From Salisapilia sapeloensis CBS 127946 (lineage: Eukaryota > Protista > Oomycota): a stretch of DNA of 54,272 bases. The DNA is taken from contig JAADVB010000116.1 of the NCBI GenBank assembly GCA_023334545.1, positions 1-54,272 of the forward strand, given 5' to 3'. The notes under the pieces are model-generated. The model saw only the letters and a list, made by a program, of their open reading frames with translations, was not told the origin of the DNA and ran no database searches. Every line of letters starts with the position of its first letter. The first letter of the stretch is position 1. This document shows, piece by piece, positions 1 through 37,181 of the stretch. The translations under genes and the position numbers were made by a program.

Positions 1-1459
1 ACCTCCATCCTGCCTCGACACGATGCCCTCCTAGACTAAAGTGAACGCCAACAAGCCTAATCCGAGCAATCGTTTCGTTGTTGACTAGCGTGTCAACTCC
101 GACGCAAGTACCTACTCTTTGTAGCGATAAAGGTACATCCCGTATAGAGATTTCCACTGGACATTTCTGAAGGAGCTGCTGGTTTCATTGAAGGTGAGTC
201 ACATGCGAAACTAATTCCGCCGTGGTCCGAAGAGAAATTAAAGTCGTCTGTGTCAAGGTCGGAAACACGAACGCTGACGAAATTGCTGTTGCTTGTTTTG
301 CGTAATACAATGCTAATGTGCTATCGCGCAAAATCCGTCGTATTGGGATTGTTTCTACATGCAATCGAGTGGTAGCATCGAGTGTTGTGCATTCGCCTTA
401 AAATGTCTTCTTGATTTGTGGTACGCAAGCGAGATCAGTCGATGATCCGAACATGAAGTTATTCATCTGGCGTTTGTTCGACCTCGCGAATGATAGAAAT
501 GTAGATTCGCAGCTTGTAGTGGCTGTCGAATAGTTGATAGCCACGGATTCTTTTAAGTTACTGCTATCTATTTTTGCCTTTCGTTGCAAGATGTAACTTG
601 GCAGCACTGAAGGCTTAATAAATTTCTGTCTTCAGCTCGTTTTTTCTTCTCGGAATGATGTGGAGTATCATGCTTCTATCTTCATAGCGCACACTTAGGC
701 ACTTCACGCATATACTGCGAGTGCATTCCTTTGGCGTGACAAGCTTGACTTCGTTTTCTTTTCAATCCGCTTCAGCAAGTTATATCTGTTCCTATCGATG
801 CATCCGGTTACCATCAAGTATCTTTACGTGGGAATCCATTGCATTCCTTCTTCCTTACAATTCGAAGGCTGCATCTAAAAGACTCATTCTTCCTCATTTT
901 TACGCTTAGCTCAAGTCAACTATGATTCGAGGATTAAAAATATAGATGGATCTCTGCTCCCTGTTTCTACATTGAGGTAGACTTGCAATCACTTTCTGCT
1001 TAGTGTTCTTTTCTTTAAATGGCAAAACCTTATGCAACCTGCGTATGAGCTTAAATATTCGAGGAGAAAAGGTTCTTCGAAAGATAAGCTCGAAAATTGA
1101 TAGCTACATCCGATGGCAGGTAAATGGCAATGCGACGCATTATAGGTAGATTTCTACAAGTGATCAAGCAATCTATTGGAGCACACACAACACTTATAGA
1201 GTGGAGCTGAGTACATGCTAGACACGAGGAACGTAGAAAATGATTGATTTGCACCCAGATCATGTCGGATACCATCTAGTGAACCTCGTTGACCGAGGTT
1301 ACAGTGTAGACTGGAAGACTAGATCTTGCCAATCAACTTTAGAGTTTATATTCTGTTTCTTTATTCTCATAAATCTTATAAGCGAGGAAGGTAGTAGGTG
1401 TGTAGGATGCATGCACTGGAAACATCGTGCTTGTAACTGGTTCATCGTGGACTTGTCGT

Positions 1460-5010: not shown

Positions 5011-5048
5011 CTCGGATCGGTCCGTGCAAAGTTATCTCCGCGGAGGCT

Positions 5049-5060
5049 AAATGGAAAGTG
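5049..5060 (-). promoter_or_regulatory. INR/FPR-like motif upstream of the protease pseudogene
   Basis: The minus strand reads CACTTTCCATTT (fits CAYTYYNCAWTT), about 40-50 nt upstream of ATG 5010. Confidence 0.4.
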
Positions 5061-5919
5061 CGAGCCCCTGAAGTTTGGCACCCCATCCGTAGCGTCGCCG
5101 GTACCAGCTACGCCCCTCGGATACCCACGATGACATGCATACGTACTAGTCATTGCTCAGGAAAGGTCCAACGTGTGTACAGGCAATAGACTTTGTCGCG
5201 GTAGTAATAATAAAGACCCATTGATGAATTCAAGAAGTGGATTCAGTACCAAGACAAGCGAACGATCGATCGGTGAAGTGTAATCTGTATATTTGCACCA
5301 AAATCAATAAAACTCTTCGGATTTTTCACTTTTATTTTAAAGTTTTGTCGCATGGGCAGCATGGACCGCGTAAATCCTTTCGAAAAGCCAAGTTTCTACG
5401 TCGATTTCGAGCGCCGTATCGATGTTCATGCGGCCAACTTGATGTTGGTCGTTCTACTGCCATTGACCATTTTAAGCAGAACTCATATAATCATCACTCT
5501 CTTTAGTGGTTTAAATAGCTCTCATATACCTTCTAATTTCATCAGCTTAGGACTAGCTCTAGCATTAGTACATGTGACGAAAGCATTGATCTGTGGATAT
5601 AAATCCATGCAGGTGTATTTCATACTTGAATAAGTAAACGATACATATTTCTTATCGTATAGTAGCTATTACCGATGAGCGGCCAGGATCGCCAATGCGA
5701 TGCATAGATCGCAATCATCTTGAAGGCCATAAGATCGTCCAAAGGGTCGTCGGATCCTTTGACAGGACGCTTCAAGATTTGTTAACTTGCTTTTTGTATA
5801 CAAAGATACTTGGGTCAAAGCAACTGTTCGTGTGCGTCCCTTGGCATTCCATTCTTTCGTTTGCTACGAAGGGCAACAAATCGGTCTGTGGCACATTCGC
5901 CATCATTGGAAAGAAGAGC

Positions 5920-8900
5920 ATGCGCTGGTGGATTGAAAAGACACTCATTGCAAGTGTGTTTCTACCACTGAGCTATGGAAATTCTAGTAAGATTATATAT
6001 TGTACTTGCTTTTAATTGTTGAAGTTACATGTTATCTAGTTCCAGGAGATCCGAGGAATGTACTGCTGTCTCCATTGACGCATGACAGCGTGAACATTAC
6101 GTGGGAGCCGCCACTTTCGACTGTACCTGTGACCTCCTACCTTGTTGAGTGGGATCCCATTCCACCCGTTCGGGCGGTGCAGACGGTCACGACATCTCAA
6201 AAGCTCTTCGGGAACGAAATCCAAGAGATACGGACGTACGCTCAGGATGTGAATGCTGTTCAACGTGTCCAGATCCTGTGCACGCCCATATCCGAGGTGC
6301 AGACGATTCGAACGCGTGCTGCGCCCGGCGAAGTGCTTGGAGGGTTGTTCACGATTGAGCTAGATACGACTGCGTTGGGCGGATCAAAGCAGCGGTCTGG
6401 TGTGATTAGTGCCTCTGCACTAGCCGACACGGCTGTGTACTCCGTAAAGGAAATCCTGAATGCGATGCCAAATATCGCTGGTGCCGTGCAGTCCGTCACG
6501 CGTTCACCAGCGGACTTGGAAGGAGGATACACATGGGAAGTCGAGTTCAAAGCTGAATTTGGCAACGTACCGGAGATGACCGTCGAAAGCAACTTTTTAA
6601 CCGGAAGTGGTGCTGACGTCATTATTGAGACACCCACACAAGGCGCATTTATCTCTCAAGGAGGGTTCACACTTGGTTTCCATGATGAATGGACAAAGGA
6701 GTTGAGTTTTGAAGCATCTTCTAAAGAGGTGGAAGAAGCACTTGAAGAATTAAGCAAAATTGCTCGAGTCGGGGTCGCTCGTGAGCCTGCTAGTCCGCAG
6801 AATGCGTTCTCTTGGTTGATCACATTTACCTCAGATGCTGAGTACAATCGAGGCGACGTTGCTCAACTAAGCATCCAAGAAAGCCAAACGTTTCTTGGCG
6901 GCGATGTCTCATTAAAGACAGAGCATGTTACGCGTGGGAACCACCTTTATGGCACGTTTCAGCTTAAATACAAGAACGTACCTACATTGGATATCCCATT
7001 TGACTGCTCGGCGGAGGTGATGCAAACGAGATTGGAGGAACTGAGCACAATTACATCCATTGCAGTCTCCCGAACGAGTGGTCCAGACACAGAGAAAGGA
7101 TATACGTGGCAAGTATCCTTTCTCGATAGTCTCGACAGTCTCGAGCTGTTAGAAATTGAGTCAATGGCGGAATTGCAAGAGACCAGAATTGATAGTGTTG
7201 TATCAAGAGGCATTTCAATCACAAAAGCGAGAGACGGAACACTACAGGAAGTCCAGCAGATCCAAGCTCGACCGTCGGATCCTGCCACCCAAGTGACTAC
7301 TTCGACCAACTATCGTATCATGACTAGCTTTGGCGGTGAAAACGCATTCACAGGTCCGATACCTGCCTTAATGCACAGCTCTGGTAGTTGTGCGTCAGAT
7401 ATGCCTGAGATTCAACAGATTGCTATCATGACAGTGGACGCAAAAGGTGTCGGACGAGATGACTTCGTCTCTCCTTTAGCCATGTACCAAATCGTTTTTG
7501 TATCGGCCAAAACAGGAATAGAAGAGACTACAACGCCATTGTATCTGAATAAGAATGACGGCGATTGTGATGCACTTGCGTCTGATATCAAAGCTAGTCT
7601 GGAAGCGTTGGATGGTGTTATTGGGACTGTCATCGTAGAGTCTACTGGCACGTCTTTCATTAAGTCGAATGAATGTACATGGACAATTACCTTCCCAAAC
7701 GAACCTGGCAATTTGGATGAACTGCGCGTGATTAATGCCTATGCGGAGCCTCCGGTTCCGGAGCAAGTATTGGTGATTGAAGATGACACAATCACCGTTT
7801 CAACGATCCAAGAAGGAAGGATCGAAGTCATCAAGACGGAGCTGGAAAAGCTGCCGAATGTCGGACCAGTTATTGTAACATATAAGCCAAAGACGGGGAA
7901 TAACGCAGACTATTCATGCACTTGGTTCGTCACCTTTGCCGGGAATACCGGGGACCTTCCATTGATGCAAGTCAGTCTAGATGTCGCGACGGTAGACCCT
8001 GCCGAGTATGATACATCGAAGCAGGCGAATGGAGATATCGTCGAGATCGTTGCTGACAAGGAAGGCACGTCAGAGGCATTGTATGGACACTTTGCATTGA
8101 GACTGTATGGTCAACGGACAGGATATGTTCCATTTGATGTGGATGCAATGCAGCTAAAGCGTGAAATTGAGATGACGTTGAACACCGGTAGCGTCTCCGT
8201 TGAACGCCAGCCATCTAATCTGCACGGAGGTTTTACATGGCGCATCGAATTTGAGAGTATCATGGGTGATGTCGAGTTGCTTCACGTGGACATTGGCAGT
8301 CTGGAAGGAACGTATCCATTGGCACAAGTGGAAAACGTTGTCCTAGGTCTGCCTCCTCCATACAACTCGAAAGATGCAGTGAACAAAGTTGCGTTCGGTC
8401 GCTCCGTGGTCACTGACTTTAGTGACTTGACTGTCATCGCTACTGATTTAGATGAAAACGTCCCGTTCTACGCTCAAGTGAGTGCGATGAATGACTTCGG
8501 ATCAAGTGCGTCTGTACCATCGACACCTCAATTCCTACCTCCGACACCTCAGACGCCTAGTGAACCCTCTCAGGTTGTCTTGTCCCACAATGACGGAGAT
8601 TCTATCCAAATATCTATTGTGAGCCCGCGAACCGATGGCGGACGTCCGCTAGATGCATACGAAGTGGAGCTATCTGACAATGGTCCGTTTGTTGATGAAG
8701 TGCAACATGTTCAGTTGTCTACTGGTGTCCAAAATGAAGAGCAAGAAGTCTCTGTGGTTACGGATGGTGTGAGTGAAGTCCAGATCATCCATCTCACATC
8801 TACATACAATGGTGCAGACCAAGTCGAAACTCAGCACGTGGATTGTGATGCTATGAATGACGACGGGTACTTTACTTTGACGTTTGTGGATGAGACAACA

Positions 8901-11900
8901 GCACGTATTAGCGCTTCGGAAACAGACGCGAACGAAATTAAGCGTGTATTGGAAGAACTAGATTCCATCACATCCGTATCTGTCGCGTTTGATGCTGGAC
9001 GAACGTTTGCGTGTGAGCAGTGTGAGCAAAGCGGTGGATGTCCTAGCTCCGGATTCTCCATCACGTACAACCAAGTAGAGGGATACAAAGGCGAGATGCC
9101 ACTGCTTACTCCGGATGTTTATAACCTGAATGGTAATCGACGGGTTCTGGTCACACAGTCGCAAATAGGAAGTGCGCCACCGGGAGGCGAGTTCCAACTA
9201 GAGTATAACAATGAGCTTACTGTACCTATTGCCTTCAACGCTAATGAGGAAGAGCTCCGTGCTGCTCTCCAGCCGCTCGAGCCTGTCTTTACCATTCAAA
9301 TAACAGAAAGCACAAACCTATTGGATGTGGCTGCACAAGATCAGCAACAAAAGCTGTGGCTTGTCACGTTTGATGGAAGTGGATATGTACCAGACTTAAC
9401 TGTACCTCAAAAAGGAAATAAGCTGACAGGCAACGGTGTCGACATTGCGTTCTACACAAAAGGAAACAAGTTTACGGATGCAATTGTATCTGTCGCTGGT
9501 AACTATGCGCGTGGAGAGTTCCAGCTAAGTCTTGGTGGCCACGTCACGGAACAAATTGCCATTGATGCGGCAGATGTCACTGTGAAAGACCGACTGGAAA
9601 AGCTTCCAAACGTCGGTGTTGTAGATGTTCGACGTTATGGTCCGACCAAGTTGAACGAGTACTCGTGGCTTGTGACTTTCGTTTCTAATCCTGGGAACTT
9701 TCCTGTCGGATCAGCGAACATGATGGAGCTGGAAGGAGTTTATAATAGTTTGGAACTGCTTGGTCAAAATAGTCGTGTTCAAGTGTCTACGTCACCGGAA
9801 GGATCGGAGTCTATTGACGGGTTCTTCACATTGAGCTACGGTAGCACGGGAGTCTATACGACTCCTATATCCGCATATGCAACTGCAGAGGGGGTGAAGA
9901 GGGCGCTGGAAGAGCTACCTAGCGTCGGTGGCGTATCGGTGAGTCGAAGGACCAACGTGGATGGCTTCTCATGGTTCGTTACGTTTGACAAGTGTCGAAA
10001 CGTTGATAATGCTGCCGTGTGCAATAACGGAGATGTACCGAACTTGACACCTGATAGCTCGCAACTACTTGGTGGAGACGTGGCAAATCCACCAACAATA
10101 ACTGTAACTAGCGTACAGGAAGGTAATGGCCCATCTAGTGGTCTCACCTACCTCTTCACGGACATGAAAAGTGCTGCACCTTATTTGGCATCTATCGAAA
10201 ACCTCATCTATGGTAAAAGGTACTATGCACGCTCATCGTTCCATTCGGAGATGGGGTACGGACCACGAACGATTTCGGTGCCTGCATACGTGACGACTAA
10301 TCATCTTCCTCCGGGTAAGATGAGACGCGTCGAACTCGTTTCTTCCTCGGCAACGTCTATTAAGGTAGAATGGGAGCCGCCGACATTAAATGGTGGCACG
10401 AGAATATCTGGATATCAACTCTTTATAGCTGATTGGGAAGGAGGAAATTATCGCAAAGTATATGATCGACCAAATGATGCAGCAACATTGTCTACAACAT
10501 TATTGATTGCCAAAGATAATGTGATTGAAAGTGGAAGGCAGTACTACTTTAAAGTACGTGCAGTGAACTTTTGCATGGCTGAGAATGAGGACGAAGGGTG
10601 CTATGGAGCGTTTAGTGACCCTGCGCAGTATCATGTGCGAGATCCAGTGCTTCCAGGCGCTCCGAGAGCACTCTATCGAGACTCTTCGACTACTATTAAT
10701 GATGTGAATGTTGTAAATGACGGCATCATTGTGGTCAATTGGGAACCACCACTGGACAATGGAGGAAGTGAAATTGTCGAGTATGAACTCTATATGGACG
10801 CAAACGATGGCAATGGCTTTATGAAACAGACTCTTTCTGGATCATTCCCTTATGGCTACACGCACTCTGTCAATGGCTTAACAGAAGGTAACACATACCG
10901 GTTCTACGTTCGAGCTGTTAATGCAGTGGGAGCATCCGGACATAGCTCTATCTTGTCTGTCGTCCTTGCAAACGTTCCGCCGCCAGTTCTCAGTGCTCAG
11001 CTTTTGGATGTAACGCCGACGTCGATGCACCTTCGATGGCAGCCACCTAGTCAATGTACATCTTCCTTGACAGCTTGTAATGGAAGCCCTGTGCTTGGTT
11101 ATAAACTGTGGCAGTTTGAAGGTGTGTCAGCGAGTTACTCGAACACGGGATATCCAGTCCATAGTGAAGTGCAACGCATTGAGACGTTCATCGGAACTCC
11201 TGGAAAAGAGGTGCAAGAAATTACGATTACAGATGCAACTGGTAAGCTCCGCATCTACTTGAATGGCGAGACGAGTCACTTGCTGGATGCAAAGGCAAGT
11301 ACCATGGAGATGAAAGCTGCTGTTGAAAGCACTGGGATTGGTGCAGTTGATGTAACGGATGGAGCTACAATGTCTGTGACAGGAAGAAGCTGGAGAGTTA
11401 CGTTTAGTGGATACACTGGTCCTTTAGAGCCGATGGTCATCGTACCTGAGACGCTTGCCAACTCTAATCCACTTGTAGCTTATACAGCTACTGTCGAGCG
11501 TGTTGAGAAAGGAAGTACCGTTCTTGCTGGTGACTTTACCGTCGCCTTTCGAGGATATGAAACTCCGTCTCTGAGCTATGATGTATCCGAGTTGGATATG
11601 AAGCGAGTACTGGAGAACTTGGAGTCTATAGGAATAGTAAGTGTAAAGAGAACCGACAAAACAGATAATGCCAGGTACTGGGATATCACGTTCATGACGG
11701 AGCTAGGTGATCTTCCGTCGATGGTTGTCACTGATGGTAGACTCACTGGAGGTGAAACCAGTGTAAAAGTGTCAACGGAGCGTGAAGGAACGTCTGGATC
11801 AATGATATACGACGGAACGACGTTTCCAGATACGCTCAAGTACACGGCGGAGGGTTTAATTCCTGATACGCTATATTCATTCGTGGTGATTGCAATTAAT

Positions 11901-14900
11901 GCTGCAGGAGATGGTCTCATGGGCATCCCTACGCCAGCGCTGGCTGCGTCTGCTGGTGCCTATAGTGCAAAAACGATTGCCTACGGTGCGTCTTTAACAC
12001 AAGGTCGTGCTGGTGTTGTCTACGAGGTGCAGAGTATCCAAACCAAGTCACTTGGTGGCGCAGACTCTTTTACACTTCAATACGGCGCAAATGAAAACGC
12101 ACTGGGTCCTTTCACAATAGCCTCGACGGTAGATGAGCTAGCAGCAGCTTTGAGAAACGAAGCTGGTGATGTTGTTGTCACAAAGGATGCGCTTATTAAC
12201 GAAGACGTTGTTTGGTTTGTGACTTTTGTCGCAATTCAAGGAGATGTAGACATGATCCGATGCAACTTGGATGCCAGCCAAGTGCTTATTGAAGAGTTTA
12301 TTCGTGGCGACGCGAATGAGTTTACCATTGCCCCGAGAAAAACTTCTGGTGATGTCGTTACGTACTCTAGTCTACCGCTCGAATTTCAAGGCAAAGATGT
12401 CTTTTACACAGAATTGTGGAGCTCTCCCGTGACGGTTGTGGATGGTACGCACGAGTGGGTTTCGGATGGTGGCAAAGCAGTGTTTAAGCCGGTTCGATAT
12501 GAAATTCAAAGGATTGAGATTGACTCGACAGCAGGATCGTTTAATGTGAAATTAGACACATCGAACGTGAGGATTGCTGGTATGGATAGCATCAGTACTG
12601 TCCATGTTGATGCTGCTCTACTTGGTCAGCCAGATACGAGTGACGAGTACGCGTCCAGTTTACTACAAGCAAGTATCGAGTCACTTGAGAATGTCGAATC
12701 GGTGCAAGTGTCTAGAACACAAGGAACAGGTGCTTCACTTCAGACAACTTGGACGTACTTGGTAACGTTCGTGAGTGACTTTTGCGATCTGCCAGAGCTT
12801 GTGCTGGACGGCGATGCTGCATTTATGAGCGAATTGACAACTGTATCTGGTCCGGAAATTACATTTACGGAAGTGCAAAAGGGAAATTGCGATGTGCAGA
12901 CGGTAATGTCATCCGCTAGTGTCGAAGCTGAGTCGCATATCATCGGCATTTCCACTTGGCTGGACGCTAGTTCAGGAACGACATCACTCTCTGGAGACTT
13001 CGAACTTGATGTGGAGGGAACTGGCGTGACGGTTACTGTTGGAGCCACTGCAGCTGATGTAAAAGCACTGCTTGAAGACGCTTTGGATGAAGAGAGTGTA
13101 CAAGTGAGTATGGAATATGCCAATTACGATGGTTCTTCCAACCTCCAGACTTGGCTAGTTACCTTTACGACTATTCTCGAGAGTGCACCAGACATTACGC
13201 TTAAAGCCAACCGACTCGTTGGAAATAATGCACAAGTCCAGATTGAAGAGGTAGAGCGAATGGATGTACCGTTTGCAGGCACATTTGTCCTTAATTTCTT
13301 AGGCGAGACGACACTTGACTTGCCATTTGATATTGAAACGTTGGAGCTGAAGACCGAGTTGGAAAAGTTGCATCAGATAAAGCAAGTGGATGTGAAGAAA
13401 GAGGAGCTTTATAATGGGAACCGATGGATTATATCCTTCACTCAGAACCTCGGTGATCTTCCGCTTTTGAAGGCGCTTCCGTATCGATATGAAGTACAAG
13501 AGGTGGAGACGATAGGAGGAACACCGACGCCTCTTGATGGACACTTTACACTGAAATTCAGAGACGAAGAGAGTGGCTCGATTGCATACGACGCTACAAG
13601 TGAACAGATGAAAGGAGTGATTGAAAGCATGTCTAGTATCGGACTGGTGGATGTGACTAGAAGTGACAAGCTCGACTATGGCAATCGGTACCAATGGCAA
13701 ATTACCTTCCGGTCGATACTGGGAGAAATTGATCTACTTGAAGCGGATGGTTCTCTACTGGAAGGAACACTGCCGTCTGTCCAGGTTACTCAGCTAGTGA
13801 GCGGTAGTGTGGAAGCTCTCACGGGAAGCTTTGTCGAGCTGGATGTGTTCAAGATGAATCCTGGTCTACCGAGCTACAGAGCTCAGTACATCCCAGAAGT
13901 TGCCAATATGGAAGAAGGGTATGCGCTTGCTGTCCAGCAGCTGAGAAAAGGAGGACTACGTGCCTTGTACTATGACAATTACTGGTTCCAGGACTCCCCG
14001 GTTCTGAACAAGATTGATCCGCAGATTAATATGAATTGGGGCACGAATGCCATTACAGAGTACGGACGTGACTATGTCAGTGTTCGATGGATGGGCAAAG
14101 TGACAGTGCCGTATGACGATGACTACGTTATCTACATTCGCTCTGTCGATGAAGTAAAAGTTTGGTTTGATCATGATCTGAAAGTAGATACTTTCAAGAC
14201 AATACCATCTACAGATGTCGGTACAAGTGCCAACTTCCACGTGCGTTTAAGTAAAGATGTTTACTACGATCTGAAGATTGAGTATCGAGAGGAAAGTGGT
14301 CCAGCGGATATGTACTTGTACTGGAGTTCATCTTACTTACCCTACCAGCTCATTCCTTCGGTGCATTTGTGGTACGGTGAGCATATTATGGACAGTCCAT
14401 TTGCAGTGCAAGTTACTCCTGGCAGCATGGATTTCCCTTATACTACAGCATACGGGGATGGACTCATTAAAGGCACGGCTGGTATTTTGTCTACATTTAT
14501 TATCCAGGCAAAGGATCAAGCTAATAACAATAAGATCGCCGGTGGAGACTTGTTTGAAGTAATCTTAACACACAAGCTCAAAGGCAACCTTCGATTGACC
14601 CCATTTGAAGAGATCGAGTATCTTGGTGACGGCCAGTACTTGGTTAAGTACCTGCCAAGTGTCAGTGGACAGTACTCGCTTTCGATCAAGACGCTCGATA
14701 ATATGGACATCTACTGTGGACTCGGTGTTGCGAACAAGTGCAGTCCGTTTACAGTGTCTGTCTCGCCTGGTCCAGTGACATCCCACACGAGTCAAGCTTA
14801 CGGTTCTTATGCAACCGGCAAGTCGAATAACGGTTTGAGAGAAGTAATAGCTGGGCAACTCGCCACTTTTGCGATTCAAGCACGAGATACGTTTGAGAAT

Positions 14901-26900: not shown

Positions 26901-29900
26901 CAGTCAGCTGAACAAGTTTTTATCAAGGTGAGTGAAAAGGTAAAAGGAGATGCTGGACTGGGTGCAGGATCTAATGAGAATAAGCAAGTGATACACTCCG
27001 AGACTGTAAAACCTCGATATAGTGTCCAGGAAGTATCAATCTACAGTGCTTCGCCTGTAGATATAAGAGGAACAATTCGACTGCAGTACGCAGGAGAATC
27101 TACTGGTGATATCGATGTCATTTCAACTGCAGACGTTGTGAAAAAGAAGCTGGAAAACTTGTATTCTATCGATACGGTGATGGTGACATCAACTCCTGTC
27201 AGTGGAGATAAATTCCTTCCAGTACAAAGGTATGGTGTCAAATGGAGTATCACAATTGCACCAGCAGATAGCATCTTTGCCAGTCCTAGTATGCTATTGA
27301 CCACGCAAAGTTCAGTAACGAAAGCTTGGAGACAAATGTCTTGTGGTGGAACCTTACTTGGAACATCACCATGTGCACAAGTATCCAGTGTAGAAGAGTC
27401 TGGACAAGTGTACAATGCGCTCATAGACTTAAACGACGTTGGATCCGATTTGAGCTCCGTGTCGTACACTGCGACAGTCTCCGCTATCAACTCCCGAAGC
27501 GACTTTAAGAGCAAAACAGTGTCGAGTAAAAAACCAGTGTACATTAGGAATCGAGCTCCTTCTGCTGTGGTGGATTTGGTGGCCAGTCCACTTGATGAAA
27601 GCACCATTGGTGTCAAGTGGAAACCGTCCCTTTCTTCAGGAGGTGATGCTATCCAGAACTACAGAGTCCAGTGGGATGTGAGTGAAAGCTTTACTGGTGT
27701 GAGCGCCTATTCTGGTGCTGATATTATTCAAACTATCGGAACACAAGTGTTCAATTACGAGATAAAGAGACTCGATAGTTCGTACGAGTATTACGTGCGA
27801 GTCATACCTTATAACGCACAAGGGTATGGAAACCCAGCGCTTGCCCAAGTGATCTTTAGTAACCAGCGAGTGGTTCGTATGATGCTGAAGAAGGATAATG
27901 GTGTCGACTTTGGAGCGCTTGATAGTGCTCTGCAGTACTTTAGACTTCACTTTACAAACTATAATACGCTCGAGACAGAGTTGATTCCAGTAAATGCTGA
28001 TGCCGCAGCGGTGGAAGAGGAGCTAAACAAGCTGGATGCTGTCGGCATGGTTTCCGTTACGAGGGACGATCATTCTAAAGGTGACGCCAATCTGTATGAC
28101 AGCATGTCGACTTCAGACTTTTTCCTAGACTGGCGTATCACGTTCATTCAAAGCTCTGTGGAAGGGATACGTCCGAATGATCTCGGTGACCTTGTCGTTA
28201 CACTGGACACGCAAGTAGCTACACCATTCGCCCAAGGGGACTTTACTGTCCAACCTATTAGTGACGAAGTAGAAGGCACAAGATCCGTTACTCCTCAAGC
28301 GATGCCAATTGCCATTTCGAAGGACCAAATACAGGTATCTGTCGTTGACGACACTTCGATCGGTGTCTACTGGACACTCGACCCGGCTCAAGTATCAAAG
28401 GTTCGGATAGAATGGAGCGATGTGCCGTATTTTGATCGATCAAGTTATTCGGACGAGAACATGTATGCAACGGTGACGGGTCTTGCAGCTATAGTTCCAA
28501 CAGCTGACGAAAAGTACTTGATCACAGGCCTATCCACTGGACTTTTGTACTACGTTCGCATTTCTGCTTTCAACGGTGACCTGGTCAATTCGCCTGACAA
28601 ACATCAAGGCTACAGTGATCCGATACTTGCTCAAGTTGTGGATGCTCACGGGAATAAAATTTCGTCACTCACTATCGCTCCGGCAGTCCAAATTCCATAT
28701 AAGCCGACAAGTGCTCGCATGAAAGTTAGCTCACTGGACATTCACGACCAGATTGAGCTCTTGTTCACCAGTCCTTCGCTCAACTATCTAGGCTTTCAAG
28801 CCGGTGATGGTGGTGACGCTATTACCAAGTATAGGGTGATGGTGGATACTAATACAGACTTTTCAAGTAGCAATAGGTTTAATGTGGACTTTAGCACGGG
28901 GGATGTTGATGGTAACCCACTGGCTTGTGTTAATGAAGAGTGCTCTTTCCCAATAGGCGCGACTGTGCAGAGTCTAAGCATTATGAAGGGAGCGACTGGA
29001 GAGTTTAAGCTGCAGAAAGGAGGGGAATTCACAAAGCGTATATGTCAGGACTGCAACATAGATCTAGTGCGTTCGTCCAATGGACTCGTGACGACTTTAA
29101 CTGCAGCAGATTTGACATGGGCAAATGATATGGGTACGCATGAGATGATCTCGTTGCGAAACGTCGATGGGCTCGCGTGCATGTTTCAAAAGTCGTCTAC
29201 GCAGTCTGCAAACCCGAACGAGCTCACTGTCACTTCTCACAATGGTGCAGCTTGTGGTCTAGTGGATACAGGTGGAGCGTTCGACGTTTACACACGAGAC
29301 ACTTCCAGTGCTTGCATCGGCAGTGCCGTGGCTTCTAGTGATCTAGCGACTGCACTTTTGAATTTATATGGAGACAAAGTGACTGTGAACCAGGAGGTGG
29401 ACTCGTCTACTTCGATGGCAAAGACATTCATGGTTACTTTTACCGGAGCAAGTGTATCGGGAAGACAAGATCCCATGCACGTTGTGGCTGCAGACGGAAC
29501 GGCTACGTGTACGAAGATGACTGGAAACGTGTGGGTAGAGTCAGAGATCCCTGGTGGGTTCTTGATGTCTGGTCAAAAGTACGCGATTCAAATTGCTGCA
29601 ATCAACTCTGCTGGCATCGGAGACTTTCTCCCAGCTAGAGCAGACTGTCATAATGGTCCATGTACAGAGGACTTCCGACTGGCTGCTCAAGCTCCTCCAG
29701 AAGCTCCTGAAACCGCGATCGTGCTCAACAAAATGGCTGACCATGAACAGTTGGAAGTTCAGTGGACACCACCTCTCGGCACGAATGGAGGTGCAGTTGT
29801 GAACTACCTTGTCGAGTACTCTACTGATTCATTCGGGCGAGTCTCGTTGTGTACGTCTTGTGCGACACAATTAGTTGGTCAAGAGCTTACGATCGATGTC

Positions 29901-32900
29901 GTGCCTGCCATTACGATCCCTGATGGTCACTTGATTGCTATTAGTAGTCTCCAACCCGAATGTCTGCTTATTAAAAAAGCAGATAAAAGCTCTAGTGGAA
30001 CGAAGAGAGTGTATGAAGTTGAAGCCAACCACGGCTGTGATGACTTTGCCGAACAGCTCGTTAATATTGAAGGTTTGCATAGCTCCAACGGTGGCTTTGT
30101 CCACGTCCAGCCAACGACTGCGCTTGTAGTAGATAGCAATGTCTATCAAACTGCGTTAACAAGTCTAGTTGCTGGTACTGCGTACGAGATCCGCGTTCGA
30201 GCACAGAATACGGAAGGCATTAGTGCTTTCACACCAGCTATTCCTACCTGTCCCAACTCTGTTTCGGATTGCACGGACGCTGTGTTGGGAGGTAACGCTC
30301 TGGCGATCGTGACGAGAGAAATCCCGAGTGTGCCAGTGGTCGAGCTTCCGTCTCTCCTTCGCACAGGTTCCTTTACGAACGAGTTGAAATTCAGTGAAAG
30401 TACGATCGAAATGGCACTGTCGGATCCGCACGAATGGGCTGGGTACGAACAAATTGATAGGTATAAAGTCGAGTGGGATGCTCTTCCAGACTTTTCATCG
30501 TCCAAGCAAAGTGCTTTGGTGGACTTGACTGGTCTCGAGCCTTCGCTGTTTACTACTAGAGAGTTGTGTAGTACATGTGTAGATGCACTCGCAGGAACGC
30601 TGCTGACGCTCTCATCTGATGTTGATGCGTTGCAGCCAGAAGAGTACGTTACCATTGACATGGGTACGACGAACTGTCTGCTGCATATAGAAAGTAAAAC
30701 TAGTCCATCCTCTTATAATGTCTACGCCGGTCACACCTGTGGCACGATCGCTTCTCCGGCAGCTTTATCCATGCATAAGCGCATCAAGTACATTTACGAG
30801 ATTACTGGACTAACTATGGGCGTACCAGTGTATGTACGTGCTGCAGCGCATAACTCACTCGGGTATGGTCCCTTTTCGGATCCGGTGAAAGTGAAGCCAC
30901 AACGACAGTCTGATCCACCCTACAACGTCCAAGTGCGTAAGCTGACACCGGAGCAAGATCCGAACATTGAGCGCGCAACTCGTATTTCTTCCGTGATGGT
31001 GACGTTTGCGTACCCGATGATTGATTTGATAACGGACTTTTATGGTGCTGGAGGGGACGATATTGAAGAGTTTTTGATCGAATGGGCAGATGCTGCGTGG
31101 AGTCAGCCGAAGAAAGAGGTGCAGACGATCGCCATTACTTCAAGCGGCAGTAATATAGTGTCAGGAGAGTTTACGTTGATGCTCGACACGACCATTGGAG
31201 CATGCCCTTTATGTCTAGAACATAGTCGAAGTGTCACAAATGCTATTTCACATAACGCAGATGCACCAGAGCTAGTGAAAGCGTTGCGAGCGCTCCCGAA
31301 TATCGGTCAGGTGGATGTGCGACGAGATCCAGCGGCTTGCACGGCATTCGACGAATGTACTTGGAAAGTGACGTTTATCTCCGAGATAGGGGACATTCCG
31401 ATGCTTGTTGTCGATAGCCATCGGCTGTATGATGCTGCTGGTGGTACGGTCGACGTCACGATAACTTCTGACAACGGTGATACGAACGGATTAAAGCTAT
31501 GTCCAACGAAGGACGCTGGTATTCTAAACGAAGGGATGGAGCACTGTGGTCGCGTGAGCTCTTCCGCAGACTCTAGCTACTCGTATTTGATCACTGGACT
31601 GGATCCTGGTGCGACGTATTACGTGCGTATGGCAGCGTATAGTACGATGGGATACAGCACTCAGCGTGTATCGGCTCCTGAATTTATAACCGTCCCGTAT
31701 GAAACTCCGAGTGCCGTTGTCTCTCCATTCAATGCCGATGGTAGACCGCTCTTGAAACTCTCTGGTCCGACTTCTTTAGTTGTAGTCTTCAACGCTCCTG
31801 TCTTTACCGGTGGTAGTGAAATCACGTCATATACGATCGAGTGGGATCGATCGGAAGACTTTACGAGCGGACCGAATGGTGACGCCATGGGAGCTCACTA
31901 TCTCGTGAATGACGCGTCAATTCGAAAGTACAGTACGAACGAAATGTTCTACAAGATTGAAGGACTGGCCACGAATCAAGTCTACTACGTTCGTGTGTTT
32001 GCTATTAACGAAGAGAAGGGTGCTGGACATCCAGTGCTGACGATGCCGACGCATGAGAAACCTCGTTCGAAACCGGAGATGCCGGCTTTACTAGAGACGT
32101 CGAATGCCGTACCAGAGGGTAGAAGCATGCAGGTGGCATGGACTCCGCCGGAGAATGATGCAAGGTCTGACAGCGCCATCGTAGCGTATCATGTACATGT
32201 GCTTGAGAAGAGTCTAACGGCACCATTCTTTGGTACACCAACGATCCAGACGCTAGAGACGAAGAACACGGTGGACGATGGATTCTTCACCTTGATGTTC
32301 GAAGGAGACACGAACTTTGTCACGGCACCGTATCGGAAACTTCCGGGTACCATCACTGTCTTGCAGGGAAGCTCGATTGTACGTACGAGTGAAGACTTGA
32401 CTGGATTGCTGGAAGTAGGAGATGTTGTCTTAATTGCAGGAGCCAAGTACCTCGTTGGTGCAACCGGGACTTTCTCTGCTACGCAGTTCCCACTCGCAGA
32501 TACTGCAGATATAAATGCCTTGTCTGGAGCAACGTTTGCGTCGACGCCTACGACGTATACTGGAACGACAATAGAGGACGAAGAACTGTACGCGCTGTGG
32601 AAAACGACTCCACTCGAGTATAACATCACTCCGAAGGACATGAAAGAGGCATTAGAGATGCTGCCTAGCGTAGGTATCGTCAACATCGAGCGTACGTCCA
32701 TAGCTGGAAATACGTACACGTGGGATATCACGTTCCTATCGACACTTCCTCGACCGAACAACCTGCTGGTGGTGAATGGACGGTATCTAACTGGTACGAG
32801 TGCTGGTGCCAGTGTGACGTTGACGGAACCAGGCAAAAATCCGACAAACTTGCACACGTTGACTGTGCCTACGAGTGAATTGAATGGAGAGCTACAGACG

Positions 32901-35900
32901 GTTATCGATGGTCTTGACACTGGCGTCGAGTACTTTGTTCAAGTCGCGGCTGAAAATGATCTTGGCGTCGGAGCGTTTAAGAGTAATATGGAAACGATAG
33001 GCTTCATCCCGACTAAGACACCTGACGCCATTGCAGACTTGCGTGTAATCGTACGATCAGCAACGTCTATAGGTGTAAAGTATGATCAGTTAGAGCGTTC
33101 TGGTGGTCTGCCAGTGGACAAGTATCGCCTCACGATTGACTCGATGTCTACATTCGAAAACACCAATACAAACTTGGTGCTAGATGATATTGCGAGAAGT
33201 CAAAAGTACTATCGAGTCACGACGGCTGCGCACACTGGTCCATTCACGCCTGAAAGTAAATTTATGCTATCAACCGTCCAATTACGTCCAGAAGTGTTGC
33301 TGCGGAACCCGCAACGGATTGATGCAAAGCTATCGGCATACGTGCAGCTGACTGAATTCGAAACCACAGGTTTCTTGATGAGGAGCAAACCGGAACTTGA
33401 TCGAGGTATCGGAGATGCGAGTCTAGTTGCGGAGGTAGGTCGAGGCCAAGTGCTTCGAGTCCGTAATGAACTCTTCACGGCATGTCTGGATTCGAATGTA
33501 AAGTACACTTTACCGAGTGTTAAAGTATCTGCTGTGAATGGCGATCGGTCAGAATTGACATTAGCTACTGCGTTATCTACGGCATGGATGGATGTGATAG
33601 TTTCTGGTACGATCCTTTCGCTTGGTGTTTCGGACTGGGCATGCCGTCTACAGGTGAATGTCGACATGGCACAGGCAGATGCTATCCAAGTGTCGCCACA
33701 TGATTGTCCGCAAGAGTTCTTTGATGAGAAGATGCCACTGGATGTAAATGTCCATATTGGACCTGCATTGCTGCCTGTATGCAATTACGATGATGCTTGG
33801 ACTCGAGTCTCACTGGAGAAACGTACAAGTATAATAGAGAAATTCAGGAATGAGAATCTGGACAATCCGATTGCGATTTTCAAGTCGACGCAGTCGCTAG
33901 GAATGATGAGTCAACTCGTGACGAATGAACAAGTCGGTCGCGTATCTCCTATGCCTCTTACGTTGGATGCAGAAGTAGCGCTTGAGTGTGGAGAGTACTT
34001 TCATCTCGGGTCTTTCTTTTCATCAAAACTCTTCCGGGTTGTAAACAAGTGCGATAGCACCAACACTTGCGGCTGTGATGTGGGTTTGATGGCTTCTACG
34101 ATTGAGATTGGCGATGTGCATAACGTTGCGACGGCCTTATCACAGTCAGATCTTGCTTTTAGTACGAAGGAAGTGCAGAAAGTAACGATTAAAGCGGCAG
34201 ACCCGATGGACTTTGGCGTCGGAGGCTTCCGTCTAAAGTTCGGAGGTGAAATCACTTCGACCACGAAAAGAGGTGGCGACGGTGGTGTCGACTTGAATGA
34301 CGATGTCGGGTGTCTTGTATGGGCTTCTGGTATAACTGACGATGACGCGGAAGCAGACCTTTTGGATATCAAAGACGAACTCTTGCGATTCGACACCATT
34401 GATAACGTACGCGTATCTCGAGAGATTACGCAAGATCGAAAGCAAGTGAATTATATTGTCGAGTTCCTCGGTATGGGAGGTAGAGGTAGATTACCAGAGC
34501 TGTCTGTGGTCAATGTCGGGAGTCAAGGATGCAGTGCATTCAGTGCTGCGGTCACGACGCATCAGGTGACGAGAGAACAAACGAGTCAAGTCAGCGTGTA
34601 CCGTTTACCTACCACTAGTCCCATTTCATTTGAAGCAACAGAAGCTGATGTGCAGCATGCTTTGGAAGCATTGGTGGATGTGGCTAAAGTCGACGTTGAT
34701 CGACAGACTCGAGACCATGGATATGACTGGGAGATCACGTTTAATTCGTATTCAGACAACGACGACTACTTGCCAGACGCAATCGTAGGAAATGGAGAGA
34801 TGCTGGTGGCAGTCTATGATCCAAAAGTGGTGGTGACTCCATTCAATCGACTACAAGTCGACCTAAGACCATATCCAGCTCTCATCGCATCCACTTCGAT
34901 CTTTGTCAAGCTGCAGGCACACAACTCAAACGGATTCGGTGCTGACTCGTTGCCGAATCCAGTGTCAACGCAGCTGAGTGACCAACCGCCTCTCGTCGTA
35001 CGAGATGCACTAGTGGAAATCCTGTCTGACACACAAGTCGCTGTTGAGTGGAGTGGTCCGAATAGCTATTTGAATGCAGATACTTTAAACTCGCTTTTAG
35101 AAATAACCGAGTACCGGCTCGAGTGGTGGCCAACGGGCGAAGAGAATAAGAAGAAGTACACGATTTTCCACGCGAGAGAGTCGGATCCGGTGCGGCAGGA
35201 TGTGCAATTGGTCAGTGTGAGTGCGCCAAAATTCTCTTCGAACGATGGGAAGACGTACGAGAAGACTTACACGATGGCAGGGACGTATCAGATCGGATAC
35301 GACAGTTGCTGGAGTCGAGAGCTGAGCTATGGTTGTACCGAGTTAGAGATGAAGGAAGCGTTGGAAGACCTTCCGACCATTCATCAAGTGCATGTAGATC
35401 GAGAGTTGGCTGCGAATGGGTACTCGTACATCATTCGTTTCGACCAGGCTTTCGGAAAGGACAGTGGGACTTCGAAGATGTTTTATAATTCTGATCTAGC
35501 TCCACCAGCACTCAACAAGCTGGAGACGAGGAACACGAACTTGCTCTTGTGTGACTCTACACCAGGCACGTCATGCTTCCCACACGTTCCGGATAGTGTG
35601 GGCCCAAGTGTCAGTCGTTCCGTCATGACAGAGGTACAGTCCCTACGCTGCAAAGGTGCTCCTGTATCGTCTGTCGGCTTCTTCCTCGAGCTAAACGGTC
35701 AAAAGACGAATAAAATTGCATCGGACGGTACGCTAATAGACTTGAAGGATGCTATCGAAGCAATGCCGGACGTTGGTGTCGTCAGCGTCACCTTTGCCAG
35801 TAACCCAGCCGCTACGACATCCTTGTGTGACGCTACGTCTCCCCCGTTCGTCCGGATTGACTTTATGACATTGCAAGGAGATGTACCACTCATGGTCGTT

Positions 35901-37181
35901 TCTGCAGATTCAGATGCTGGCGTAAGTGTCGTGACGAGAGAAGTTGAGAAGGGTAAGAACCAGCGTGAAAAGGGTCGGAAACCGTACTCGTTTGTCGTCC
36001 ATGGATTGGCACCTACAAAAACTTATGCACTCCGTATCGCTGGTGCAAATAGGATCGGATACGGATACTTTTCCGATATTCTTCAAATTAAGACGTACTT
36101 GCAGCCACCAAGTCCCCCTGCTTCCATCCAAGTCGCCGAGAACTTGGATGCACAACGGCTCCTTGTCACGTTTGAAGAACCTCCATTCGATGGTGGAAAT
36201 GACATTACAGGTTACCATATTGAATGGGACTTGATGCCGTCGCTTACGAGTACTTGTGGGGAAGCGATGGAAGTTGCAAGCATTCGCTTTGCAAGCGAAA
36301 ATGCGCTAGATGCTGTTCCGACGTTTGGTTTCACTCTTACGAGCCGATTTGCTTTCAGCGGCGACACGCCAAGTAATAGTAGATGCATCTCGTGGAAATC
36401 GACTGCTGCGCAAGTAGAGACGCTGGTGAAGGAACACGCCGGAGAGTTTTCGGCGTTAGAACACGTTCGGGTGACAAAGTATGGAGACGATAGTGCCAAA
36501 TGGGACTATGGACATACCTATCGTATCACGTTTGTGAATGAAGATGAAGACCCATTCTTCCAAGTGCCTGAGATAGAGTTTTATGCCGGATGCTCATTTG
36601 CGAATACCAAGTCTATTGCCTTCGAGCAAATGCACCCGGACTTGGATGTAATCACAGCAACGGGGGTGGTCAATACGGTGAAGAAAGCTTGTGATGCCAA
36701 CTTACTACGCAGTCGGTTGTACCACACCATTTCGGAAAACCAGGCACTGACGACTGCACTCTCGGCACCAGCACTGTCGCTCGGGTTGGAGTATATTGGA
36801 GCACACGCAGATATACTGTGTGAGTCGTGTGTGCAAACACTTGACGCGAGCAACAAGCTGACATTGGCATCGCCAATCAGCACGTCTCCACTGCCAAATC
36901 CGTATGTAATTCTAGAGGATCCTCTTCATGGTGCTTTCTGCGTTATGGAGCTGGTCGGATACAGCGATGGTGATACGACAGTCACAGTTGATCTTATGGA
37001 AGCAGAAGGGGTACATGGCGTTGCATGCTCTCTCGAGCTGCCTTTCGAAAAGCAAGCATATCGGATGAAGCAGTTCAATTTGCGAGCGTATTGGATCGCC
37101 AACTTGGTGTCTGGGAAACAGTACACTATATCCGTTCGTGCTGAGAACAGTGTAGGTCGAGGAGATGCCATCATTGTTTAA
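5920..37181 (+). CDS. Giant secreted multidomain protein, about 10,402 aa: FN3 (~22), filamin/Ig (~9), PA14 (3), unnamed repeat module (~40). Exons 5920-5986 and 6040-37181
   Basis: A 31-kb stop-free ORF. The ORF-track start at 6000 is a TTG. An upstream ATG at 5920 encodes the signal-like MRWWIEKTLIASVFLPLSYGNS and splices in frame (GTAAGA at 5987, TAG ending 6039) to the first FN3 (PGDPRNV..VNITWEPP..YLVEWD). FN3, filamin (AYGxGL..AG..F.IQA.D..N) and PA14 (GGL...YY.N..F..D.QINF.WG..YVSVRW.G) motifs recur along the ORF. The 5' exon is less certain than the ORF itself. Confidence 0.9.
5987..6039 (+). other. Predicted 53-nt phase-1 intron of the giant gene (alternative in-frame acceptor at 6045)
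   Basis: GTAAGA donor, T-rich interior with TTTTAAT, TAG acceptor. It restores the frame between ATG 5920 and the long ORF, and its size matches the two L21 introns. Confidence 0.7.
13950..14375 (+). other. PA14 domain 1 in the giant protein
   Basis: GGLRALYYDNYWF..KIDPQINMNWG..YVSVRWMGKV..SVDEVKVWFD..YYDLKIEYREESG..LYWSS. Confidence 0.8.
18399..18835 (+). other. PA14 domain 2 in the giant protein
   Basis: GGLAGYYY..RHDLSVDFSWG..YYSVMWTGEI..GSDEGAMLMLDG..YYAIQIKYR..VQLQWGS. Confidence 0.8.
22464..22900 (+). other. PA14 domain 3 in the giant protein
   Basis: GGLLASYYTNRWLF..RVDKEINFEW..YVSVRWQGYI..VNDGGRVWIG..ITVEYREEVG..LFWES. Confidence 0.8.

What the first reader, a model, noticed from the sequence alone, without database searches (positions are those of the whole stretch)
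6040..37181. Russian-doll architecture: most FN3 domains are split at the same loop by inserted modules
Seen: about 15 of about 22 FN3 units have their first half (P..P..v.....l.v.W.pP..dGG..i..Y.vEW) separated from their second half (i.gL..G..Y.vrV.A.N..G.g) by foreign modules, always just after the Y.vEW strand. FN3 no.1 opens at 6040-6155 and closes at about 8435-8505, with about 760 aa inserted. Another opens at about 33060-33140 and closes at about 34900-34940. About 7 FN3 units are intact. Guests also contain guests: Cys modules sit inside the EVQ module at about 15480 and about 29040. Inference: the protein is a branched 'bottle-brush' (backbone of FN3/filamin domains with looped side arms) rather than beads on a string. 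Standard HMM scans would undercount these domains.
Basis: partly seen in the sequence, partly recalled or inferred. Interest (0 to 1): 0.82.

Follow-up and report, generated by a model that had tools for sequence, protein, structure and literature searches.

The report
Giant protein built of nested domains
A 10,393-residue oomycete protein is not beads on a string: 15 of its 22 FN3 domains are each interrupted by looped-out side arms of other modules, nested up to five deep, which is far more systematic domain nesting than I know of in any described protein.

Summary

**What is there**
- The ORF at 6000-37181 (+) encodes 22 FN3 domains. Seven are intact and 15 are split into an A-B-C half and an E-F-G half.
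- The two halves lie 102-757 residues apart and alternate strictly along the chain. Pfam counts only 9 FN3 stretches.

**Do the halves close?**
- AlphaFold2 models of two split units say yes. One has pLDDT 94 and a 495-residue insert. The other has pLDDT 76 and is FN3 containing EVQ containing a Cys module.
- In both models, whole crystal FN3 domains superpose on N-half plus C-half: 96-103 residues, rmsd about 2 Å, Z 10.6-13.9.
- Distant homologues have the same FN3s without the Cys-module guest ("empty sites").
- The domain string is the same in Pythium and Phytophthora. FN3-containing-EVQ units also occur in diatoms and Triparma.

**Correction**
- The insert lies between strands C and E, but not always in one loop. 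It is in C-C' in unit 2 and in C'-E in units 8 and 10.

**New points**
- The unnamed EVQ module is homologous to the CTE-like domains of mycobacteriophage Bxb1 gp23 (E 1e-28; Z 14.2).
- EVQ arms appear to be built "out by single strands, back by module bodies", which brings both ends of an arm to one loop.
- Four of eight filamin repeats are split in the same way.

The scan had noted nested EVQ strands on another piece of this genome (s1-280842). No experimental structure exists. The protein's function (a glycan-binding adhesin) is inferred.

The parts
6000..37181 (+). Giant ORF, 10,393 aa (residue n = nt 6000+3(n-1)). It contains 22 FN3, at least 8 filamin repeats, 3 PA14, about 42 EVQ modules and 6 four-Cys modules.
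5920..5985 (+). Probable first exon encoding a signal-peptide-like start (MRWWIEKTLIASVFLPLSYG...). A GT...AG intron follows, ending just before VPGDPRN.
   Evidence: reading of the sequence only; agrees with scan note s1-282537. No spliced read was seen.
6039..8510 (+). Split FN3 unit 1: N-half 6039-6158, C-half 8430-8510, 757-aa insert. The insert has 4 leading EVQ strands, 3 bodies, 2 strands, then 3 bodies.
8550..10289 (+). Split FN3 unit 2: N-half 8550-8678, four orphan EVQ strands 8697-8846, four EVQ bodies 8862-10127, C-half 10164-10289. This unit was modelled (model A).
10308..10964 (+). Two intact FN3 domains (aa 1437-1543 and 1551-1655).
10977..11942 (+). Split FN3 unit 3: 2 leading EVQ strands followed by 2 bodies. 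The N-half is weak (E 0.21).
15174..16022 (+). Split filamin repeat (N 15174-15341, C 15948-16022). It holds an EVQ module that itself holds a Cys module (15480-15656).
16140..18071 (+). Split filamin repeat with an insert of about 590 aa made of EVQ modules.
   Evidence: weak half-hits, E 0.007-0.014
18969..19718 (+). Split filamin repeat whose insert includes the Cys module at 19131-19367.
21228..22451 (+). Split filamin repeat holding EVQ modules. One of these EVQ modules is itself interrupted by a Cys-less small beta module.
22953..23669 (+). Split FN3 unit 4 (one EVQ guest).
24075..24938 (+). Split FN3 unit 5 (one EVQ plus a small beta module).
25302..26444 (+). Split FN3 unit 6 (two EVQ).
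26463..27539 (+). Split FN3 unit 7 (two EVQ in tandem). The C-half is degenerate and was seen by eye only.
28752..29624 (+). Split FN3 unit 8: FN3 containing EVQ containing a Cys module (29037-29258). This unit was modelled (model B).
29694..30227 (+). Split FN3 unit 9: the guest is the Cys module at 29844-30047. Distant homologues lack the guest.
30393..30872 (+). Split FN3 unit 10: the guest is the Cys module at 30558-30746, in the C'-E loop. Distant homologues lack the guest.
31002..31679 (+). Split FN3 unit 11 (one EVQ guest, conserved in all homologues aligned).
32070..32975 (+). Split FN3 unit 12 (an EVQ that is itself interrupted by a Cys-less beta module).
33018..34979 (+). Split FN3 unit 13 (580-aa insert). 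The C-half is weak (E 0.11).
34983..36068 (+). Split FN3 unit 14 (two EVQ).
36102..37169 (+). Split FN3 unit 15 (EVQ plus the Cys module at 36813-37031). The protein ends at the last FN3 strand.

Best explanation
The gene encodes a probably secreted protein of about 1.1 MDa. Its chain is a backbone of beta-sandwich domains (22 FN3 and at least 8 filamin repeats). Most of these domains are hosts.

**How the hosts are interrupted (shown for two units by models, for two more by alignment).** Between strands C and E of 15 FN3s the chain leaves the sandwich, builds a side arm of 100-760 residues, and returns to complete the same sandwich. Four filamin repeats are interrupted at an equivalent interior loop.

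**What the arms are made of (shown by sequence and structure comparison).**
- EVQ modules of about 100 aa with an alpha/beta fold. They have no Pfam family and are homologous to the CTE-like domains of mycobacteriophage Bxb1 gp23, capsid and tail-tube proteins.
- Small four-Cys beta modules of about 65 aa. In every context that could be resolved they occur as guests, either in an FN3 loop or in the beta2-alpha1 loop of an EVQ module.

**How multi-module arms fit into a loop (inferred from alignment ranges, not from contacts).** The chain first lays down one orphan beta1 strand (E.Q.I) per module on the way out. It then returns through the module bodies in reverse order, so strand k completes body n+1-k. 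Both ends of the arm therefore meet at the host loop. Unit 2 is five levels deep: FN3 containing four nested EVQ modules. Some arms use tandem rather than nested modules.

**Function (inferred).** The protein is a rigid, branched, multivalent surface or matrix adhesin that presents many glycan-binding-type modules (PA14 and CTE-like).
For: **Split FN3 halves and their order.**, with the shuffle control.

**FN3 closure.**
- Model A has pLDDT 94.4 and pTM 0.73. Whole FN3 crystal chains align 99-103 residues at rmsd 1.7-2.1 Å, Z 13.5-13.9, over model range 5..592.
- Model B gives FN3 alignments of 96-99 residues over range 4..324, Z 10.6.
- The insulin-receptor and IGF1R FnIII-2 domains, which have their own insert in that domain, are among the hits.

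**Position of the insert.** In model A strand C is at model residues 42-48 and C' at 539-542.

**Empty sites.** In alignment A2, P0171, P0003, P0009 and P0011 have FN3 units 9 and 10 uninterrupted where the window and its five closer homologues have the Cys module.

**Conservation.**
- The domain string is the same in P0001 (Pythium insidiosum) and P0002 (Phytophthora nicotianae).
- FN3-N / EVQ / FN3-C units occur in Thalassiosira, Skeletonema and Triparma proteins.

**EVQ homology.**
- A profile of 17 EVQ modules hits Bxb1 gp23 at E 1.4e-28, the Bxb1 capsid protein at 3.9e-4 and the tail tube at 0.016.
- The structural match to 9d93_Md has Z 14.2, 106 residues and 33% identity.
- PMC13252515 calls these 'CTE-like domains'.

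**Nesting.**
- The 9d93 alignment covers model range 65..425 with only 106 residues. That range runs from orphan strand 2 (residues 69-76) to the end of body 3 (327-425).
- Atlas alignments cover residues 50-475 (strand 1 plus body 4) and 93-236 (strand 4 plus body 1).
- All four orphan strands have pLDDT above 95 and are conserved as E.Q in 52 homologues.
- Across the family, short leaders of one-body inserts carry at most one E.Q strand. Four-body inserts carry four.

**Cys module as a guest.**

**Filamin hosts.**
Against: - Only 2 of 15 split FN3s were modelled. Model B is of middling confidence (pLDDT 76.5, alignment of 19 rows).
- The tools return no coordinates, contacts or PAE. FN3 closure and nesting are therefore read from alignment ranges and lengths, not from contact maps.
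- AlphaFold has a strong FN3 prior.
- The unit-7 C-half is not detected by the HMM. Two other halves are weak.
- Not all arms follow the out-and-back rule. Unit 7 and many two-body inserts in the family have one leading strand, which is a tandem arrangement.
- A regression of leader length on module number was not significant.
- There is no experimental structure, no localisation, and only thin RNA evidence: five short contigs in one run.
- The signal peptide and intron are read by eye.
- Glycan binding is an inference from PA14 and from what is proposed for phage CTE-like domains.
Confidence: 0.8

Rival explanations
1. Beads on a string. The 'half FN3' motifs are degenerate remnants or independent mini-modules that pack against neighbouring sequence, and the protein is a linear chain.
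For: Three halves are weak or undetected. Pfam sees only 9 FN3 stretches.
Against: - An FN3 half cannot make a sandwich alone. By established FN3 topology, strands A-B need E and strand C needs F.
- N and C halves alternate strictly 22 times.
- Both models close the sandwich over the insert, with full-length superposition on crystal FN3s.
- Homologues have the same FN3s uninterrupted.
Confidence: 0.04
2. Intermolecular complementation. The halves are real, but in vivo the N-half of one chain pairs with the C-half of another (3D domain swapping through the long inserts). This would build a cross-linked polymer or mat, not closed intramolecular dolls.
For: Long inserts in a loop are the classic setting for domain swapping (general knowledge). 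A single-chain prediction cannot see it. A matrix or adhesive role would suit a polymer.
Against: - The out-and-back arm design brings both arm ends to the same loop. That design is only needed for intramolecular closure.
- The small guests of about 100 aa in units 9 and 10 have adjacent termini.
- pTM is 0.72-0.73 for the monomer models.
Confidence: 0.08
3. Mixed state. Most split FN3s close, but the most degenerate ones (units 7 and 13, and perhaps unit 3) no longer form FN3 sandwiches and act as linkers.
For: The unit-7 C-half is not detected and is also missed in both orthologues. The unit-13 C-half and the unit-3 N-half have E 0.1-0.2.
Against: The motifs are still visible by eye at the expected places and in the expected order. 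Their positions are conserved in the orthologue domain strings.
Confidence: 0.15

Closest known systems
FnIII-2 domain of the insulin receptor and IGF-1 receptor, with its insert domain
   Same: One FN3 sandwich is interrupted by a long insert and closes around it. These chains superpose on both models: 5u8q_A covers chain range 577..797 with 95 residues aligned, Z 12.7, and 6pxv_A and 4zxb_E also hit. That the receptor insert lies in the CC' loop is from my own knowledge, not checked here.
   Different: The receptor has one such FN3. Its insert is about 120 residues, largely disordered and cleaved. Here 15 FN3s host folded modules of up to 757 residues, and the guests themselves host guests. 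In some units the site is the C'-E loop.
CTE-like domains of mycobacteriophage Bxb1 (gp23 tail-tip cage / distal tail protein, capsid and tail-tube C-terminal domains; PDB 9d93, 9d9w, 9d94)
   Same: The EVQ module is homologous in sequence (E 1.4e-28) and in fold (Z 14.2, 33% identity). In gp23 the profile matches three N-parts (residues 271-324, 333-387, 399-461) followed by C-parts (514-564, 565-595), which suggests nesting there too.
   Different: The phage proteins carry one to three copies on virion subunits. Here about 42 copies sit in a eukaryotic giant protein. The break point differs: in the window it is after beta1, and in gp23 it appears to be after about profile position 56. The phage role (host glycan contact) is proposed, not shown, for the eukaryotic module.
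Beads-on-a-string giant FN3/Ig proteins (titin; bacterial giant adhesins)
   Same: Very long chains of FN3-type sandwiches. The Phytophthora homologues are auto-named 'Titin'.
   Different: In those proteins the domains are serial and uninterrupted (general knowledge). Here two thirds of the FN3s are hosts and most of the mass is in side arms.
Nested domain insertions in general (protease-associated domains in subtilases, for example)
   Same: A continuous guest domain with adjacent termini sits in a surface loop of a host domain.
   Different: From memory, surveys of solved structures report one or rarely two levels of nesting. Here there are up to five levels, a dedicated guest module, and an out-and-back rule for multi-module guests.

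Membership tests
Fibronectin type III domain (PF00041) | Sequence match to the family profile above Pfam's gathering score | tested here: met
   fn3 scores 99.7, 137 and 202 bits in the three pieces against a cut-off of 25. Only 9 stretches pass on their own.
Fibronectin type III domain (PF00041) | Seven-strand beta sandwich that superposes on solved FN3 domains over the whole domain, tested for the split units | tested here: met
   Unit 2: 8osd_A aligns 103/103 residues, rmsd 2.1 Å, Z 13.5, model range 5..592. Unit 8: 96-99 residues, Z 10.6, range 4..324. The other 13 split units were not modelled.
FN3 with an insert like insulin-receptor FnIII-2 | Insert located between strands C and C' | tested here: inconclusive
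   Met in unit 2: C at model residues 42-48, C' at 539-542. Not met in units 8 and 10, where a C' strand precedes the guest. It works alike, but it is not a homologue of the receptor insert.
Bxb1 CTE-like domain (EVQ module) | Significant profile-to-sequence match | tested here: met
   A profile of 17 EVQ modules against PDB sequences hits gp23 at E 1.4e-28 with three stretches at 1e-5 to 1e-6, and the capsid protein at 3.9e-4.
Bxb1 CTE-like domain (EVQ module) | Same fold in a solved structure | tested here: met
   9d93_Md: Z 14.2, rmsd 2.1 Å, 106 residues, 33% identity.
Bxb1 CTE-like domain (EVQ module) | Binding of cell-surface glycans | not testable with these tools
   This is only proposed for the phage proteins in the papers read.
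Filamin/ABP280 repeat (PF00630) | Pfam match above the gathering score; split copies matched by halves | tested here: met
   Pfam gives 60.9 and 58.1 bits against a cut-off of 26.9. My own HMM finds 4 intact repeats and 4 N/C pairs, the halves at E 2e-7 to 0.014. The split copies were not modelled.
PA14 (PF07691) | Pfam match above the gathering score | tested here: met
   60.4 and 110.8 bits against a cut-off of 24.
ATP-synthase alpha/beta N-terminal beta-barrel (PF02874), as the fold of the Cys module | Structural or sequence similarity | tested here: inconclusive
   Atlas shape match has TM 0.54 by the match, over model residues 119-288. There is no sequence match in PDB and none by language-model features. 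This is a lead only.

The most novel reading that the evidence does not exclude
Stramenopile giant surface proteins use a general construction rule not described before. Linear arrays of a phage-related module become loop-insertable side arms by intramolecular strand complementation: orphan beta1 strands on the way out, module bodies on the way back. The arms are then plugged into FN3 and filamin hosts. This gives the deepest natural domain nesting known (five levels) and a branched, mechanically locked rod. The same module and its habit of nesting are shared with mycobacteriophage tail-tip proteins, which implies an old transfer between phage or bacterial and eukaryotic lineages.
Probability: 0.5. 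Interest if true: 0.85.

Novelty: new variant of a known kind. Interest (0 to 1): 0.72.

Why it matters
- **Annotation.** Domain annotation pipelines assume serial domains. Here Pfam sees 9 of 22 FN3s and has no family for a module that makes up about 40% of a 1.1-MDa protein. The module is common in oomycete, diatom and other protist giant proteins: 552 cluster representatives match a 1,146-aa piece of this protein at E below 1e-30.
- **Protein architecture.** Systematic, multi-level nesting with a simple topological rule shows how evolution can build branched proteins from a single chain. It also offers a natural template for engineering loop-insertable multi-domain arms.
- **Testable function.** The link to the Bxb1 CTE-like domains gives a first testable function, glycan binding, for a family conserved across oomycetes, a group that includes plant and animal pathogens. 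It also raises a question about the origin of the module.

Tried and rejected
- **Leader length against module number.** A regression and rank correlation across 160 family units was not significant (Spearman 0.06). The set is dominated by orthologues and by undetected halves. I replaced it with a direct count of E.Q strands in leaders, which supports 'strands never exceed bodies' but is not a formal test.
- **Third word-index homologue search**, for units 8-9. It found nothing, so model B had to use a shallow alignment of 19 rows.
- **Cys module.** A profile against PDB sequences gave nothing (best E 1.7). Atlas features gave nothing (best score 0.48).
- **EVQ module in family libraries.** No Pfam family recurs. 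PHROGs gave only sporadic hits to tail sheath and major tail protein.
- **Literature.** Four searches turned up no description of this architecture in oomycetes or stramenopiles, nor of multi-level nesting in FN3 (and the failed). The original Bxb1 structure paper is not in the library.
- **Artefact.** Assembly or intron artefact is rejected as the cause of the splits. The ORF is continuous, an independent DNA contig is identical, and the splits are conserved across genera.


Full report
**The object**

The window holds one open reading frame of 10,393 codons on the + strand, nt 6000-37181. Scan notes place the genome among the oomycetes. The best homologues are from Pythium insidiosum (P0001) and Phytophthora nicotianae (P0002, auto-named 'Titin'). 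They are 37% identical and collinear over aa 3664-10393 and 4559-10384.

Pfam recognises only fn3, Filamin and PA14.

**Checking the observation**

I built an FN3 HMM from six intact copies in this protein, then separate N-half and C-half HMMs.

- The protein has 22 FN3 units.
- Seven give one continuous full-length match.
- Fifteen give an N-half match (strands A-B-C, ending in Y.vEW) and, 102-757 residues later, a C-half match (strands E-F-G).
- The halves alternate N, C, N, C without exception.
- Twenty shuffles of the sequence give 0-2 half-hits each, against 21 N-half and 20 C-half hits in the real sequence.

Pfam counts 9 FN3 stretches, so the predicted undercount is real.

Three halves are weak. 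The unit-3 N-half has E 0.21. The unit-13 C-half has E 0.11. The unit-7 C-half is visible only by eye.

**Do the halves form one sandwich?**

An exhaustive search of 1.84 billion cluster representatives with aa 845-1990 found 552 proteins at E below 1e-30. Many match collinearly. I aligned 52 stretches covering unit 2 (A1). Their consensus keeps four successive E.Q strands.

*Model A (aa 845-1440).* AlphaFold2 gives mean pLDDT 94.4 and pTM 0.73. The tools return no coordinates, so I used the structural aligner as the read-out. This fragment contains no intact FN3. Complete single-domain FN3 crystal structures still superpose on it over their full length:

- titin Fn3-49, 103 of 103 residues, rmsd 2.1 Å, Z 13.5, model range 5..592;
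- titin A77-A78, 99 residues, Z 13.9;
- about 48 more rows, all FN3 chains.

About 100 aligned residues spread over a range of 588 can only mean that residues about 5-50 and about 540-592 together make one FN3. DSSP puts strand C at model residues 42-48 and C' at 539-542. The 495-residue guest therefore sits in the C-C' loop.

*Model B (aa 7560-7885, unit 8).* The alignment has 19 rows (A3). Confidence is lower (pLDDT 76.5, pTM 0.72). The answer is the same: FN3 chains align 96-99 residues over model range 4..324 with Z 10.6.

In both searches the FnIII-2 domains of IGF1R and the insulin receptor appear among the hits. These are natural FN3s with their own insert.

**Independent evidence from evolution**

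- In alignment A2 the five closer homologues (P0006, P0001, P0007, P0002, P0008) carry the Cys module in FN3 units 9 and 10.
- Four more distant homologues (P0171, P0003, P0009, P0011) have the same two FN3s uninterrupted. The flanks align across the gap.
- For unit 10 this alignment places the guest after the C' strand, that is in the C'-E loop. Model B also shows a strand before the guest (residues 66-71).
- The site is therefore 'between C and E', not one fixed loop.
- The string of N-halves, EVQ modules, C-halves and intact FN3s is the same in the Pythium and Phytophthora orthologues.
- FN3-N / EVQ / FN3-C units occur in proteins of Thalassiosira, Skeletonema and Triparma. The design therefore predates the split between oomycetes and ochrophytes.

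**The guests**

*EVQ module.* An iterated HMM finds about 42 EVQ modules of about 105 aa. A profile of 17 of them (A4) matches:

- the Bxb1 'tail tip cage' gp23 at E 1.4e-28;
- the Bxb1 major capsid protein at 3.9e-4;
- the Bxb1 tail tube protein at 0.016.

The best structural match of model A is the same gp23 chain: 9d93_Md, Z 14.2, 106 residues, 33% identity. [quoted passage not shown] Language-model neighbours of the EVQ module are unnamed clusters from diatoms, a chlorophyte and oomycetes.

*Cys module.* It is about 65 aa with four nearly invariant Cys. There are six copies here and about 50 in the 193 proteins collected. By context:

- 21 lie between an FN3 N-half (8-10 residues after it) and a C-half;
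- 15 lie inside an EVQ module, which resumes at profile position about 25-36;
- the remainder are unresolved contexts.

It behaves as a dedicated guest. Homologues show Cys-less versions at the same place. Its fold may resemble the small N-terminal beta-barrel of F1-ATPase subunits (TM 0.54), which is only a lead. Sequence searches find nothing.

**How multi-module arms fit into a loop**

A tandem of four modules would have its ends far apart, yet both ends must meet at one FN3 loop.

In unit 2 the chain after strand C shows four short strands (model residues 56-63, 69-76, 82-89, 100-106). All have pLDDT above 95 and all carry E.Q. Four module bodies follow.

The alignment ranges fit a nested pairing, in which strand k completes body 5-k:

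- The gp23 alignment covers model residues 65..425 with only 106 residues. That is orphan strand 2 plus body 3, which ends at 425.
- Atlas alignments cover residues 50-475 (strand 1 with body 4) and 93-236 (strand 4 with body 1).

Unit 2 is thus FN3 containing M4, which contains M3, which contains M2, which contains M1. The high pTM for a five-domain chain fits a locked rod.

Unit 3 has two strands then two bodies. Unit 1 has 4 strands, 3 bodies, 2 strands, 3 bodies, which is a balanced bracket word.

Across the family:

- short leaders before one-body inserts carry at most one E.Q strand;
- two-body inserts fall into a one-strand (tandem) class and a two-strand (nested) class;
- four-body inserts carry four strands.

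The rule is common but not universal. In Bxb1 gp23 the profile matches three N-parts followed by C-parts, which suggests nesting in the phage protein too, at a different break point. I infer the pairing from alignment ranges, not from contacts.

**The rest of the backbone**

A filamin HMM built from family members finds four intact repeats and four N/C pairs: aa 3059-3114/3317-3341, 3381-3402/3996-4024, 4324-4355/4545-4573 and 5077-5134/5451-5484. Their inserts are 190-590 residues of EVQ and Cys modules. The half-hits are weak.

**Gene and expression**

- Upstream, an ATG at nt 5920 opens a 22-codon hydrophobic start, followed by a GT...AG interval that ends just before the first FN3. This fits a signal peptide but is unverified.
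- The protein ends at the last FN3 strand.
- One run labelled RNA from the same organism holds five short identical contigs within nt 6020-9176. This is thin evidence of transcription.
- A DNA contig from the likely source sample is identical.

**Verdict**

- the phage CTE-like homology of the EVQ module;
- the out-and-back arm rule;
- the filamin hosts.

Single domain insertions, including one in FN3, are known. The scale, depth and regularity here are not known to me. I found no description in four literature searches (and the failed 27).

The scan had already noted nested EVQ strands on another piece of this genome (s1-280842). That note gave me the lead, which I tested here on unit 2.

Function is inferred: a secreted, branched, multivalent adhesin or matrix protein that presents PA14 and CTE-like modules.

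Noticed in passing
window 15174-22451: Four of eight filamin repeats are split into N and C parts by 190-590-aa inserts of EVQ and Cys modules. The rule is the same as for FN3, and the break falls at filamin profile position about 57-65.
   Followed up: partly
window 13950-14336, 18399-18800, 22467-22874: Each of the three PA14 domains directly follows the 'Y.v.Y.p..G.Y.l.v' strand pair of a filamin repeat. This agrees with scan note s1-282442 that PA14 sits in the last hairpin of a filamin repeat.
   Followed up: no
window 5920-6038: An ATG at 5920 opens a hydrophobic 22-codon exon (MRWWIEKTLIASVFLPLSYG..). A GTAAG...CTAG interval follows. The giant ORF's TTG 'start' at 6000 lies inside this putative intron.
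   Followed up: partly
window 21640-21840 and 32340-32580 (aa about 5215-5280 and 8780-8860): Cys-less versions of the small guest module interrupt EVQ modules. In homologues P0016 and P0171 the guest of unit 8 also lacks the four Cys (alignment A3).
   Followed up: partly
PDB 9d93 gp23 residues 271-595: In the Bxb1 tail-tip cage protein the EVQ profile matches three N-terminal module parts in a row and then C-terminal parts. The solved phage protein may itself hold nested CTE-like domains.
   Followed up: no
window 11960-13950 (aa about 1988-2650): The six EVQ modules between FN3 unit 3 and the first PA14 seem to be bracketed by a filamin-like start (..TIAYGASLTQGRAG..) and a filamin-like end (..YRAQYIPEV..GYALAVQQL). 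The HMM did not detect this pair, so a further split filamin repeat is possible.
   Followed up: no
window 6020-9176: A run labelled RNA from the same organism (X2) holds five identical contigs of 200-400 nt inside the ORF. No spliced joints were seen. Coverage is too thin to say more.
   Followed up: partly
window 26463-27539 (unit 7): Its two EVQ modules each have their own leading strand (tandem, not nested), and the FN3 C-half is degenerate here and in both orthologues. It is unclear how this arm brings its ends together.
   Followed up: no
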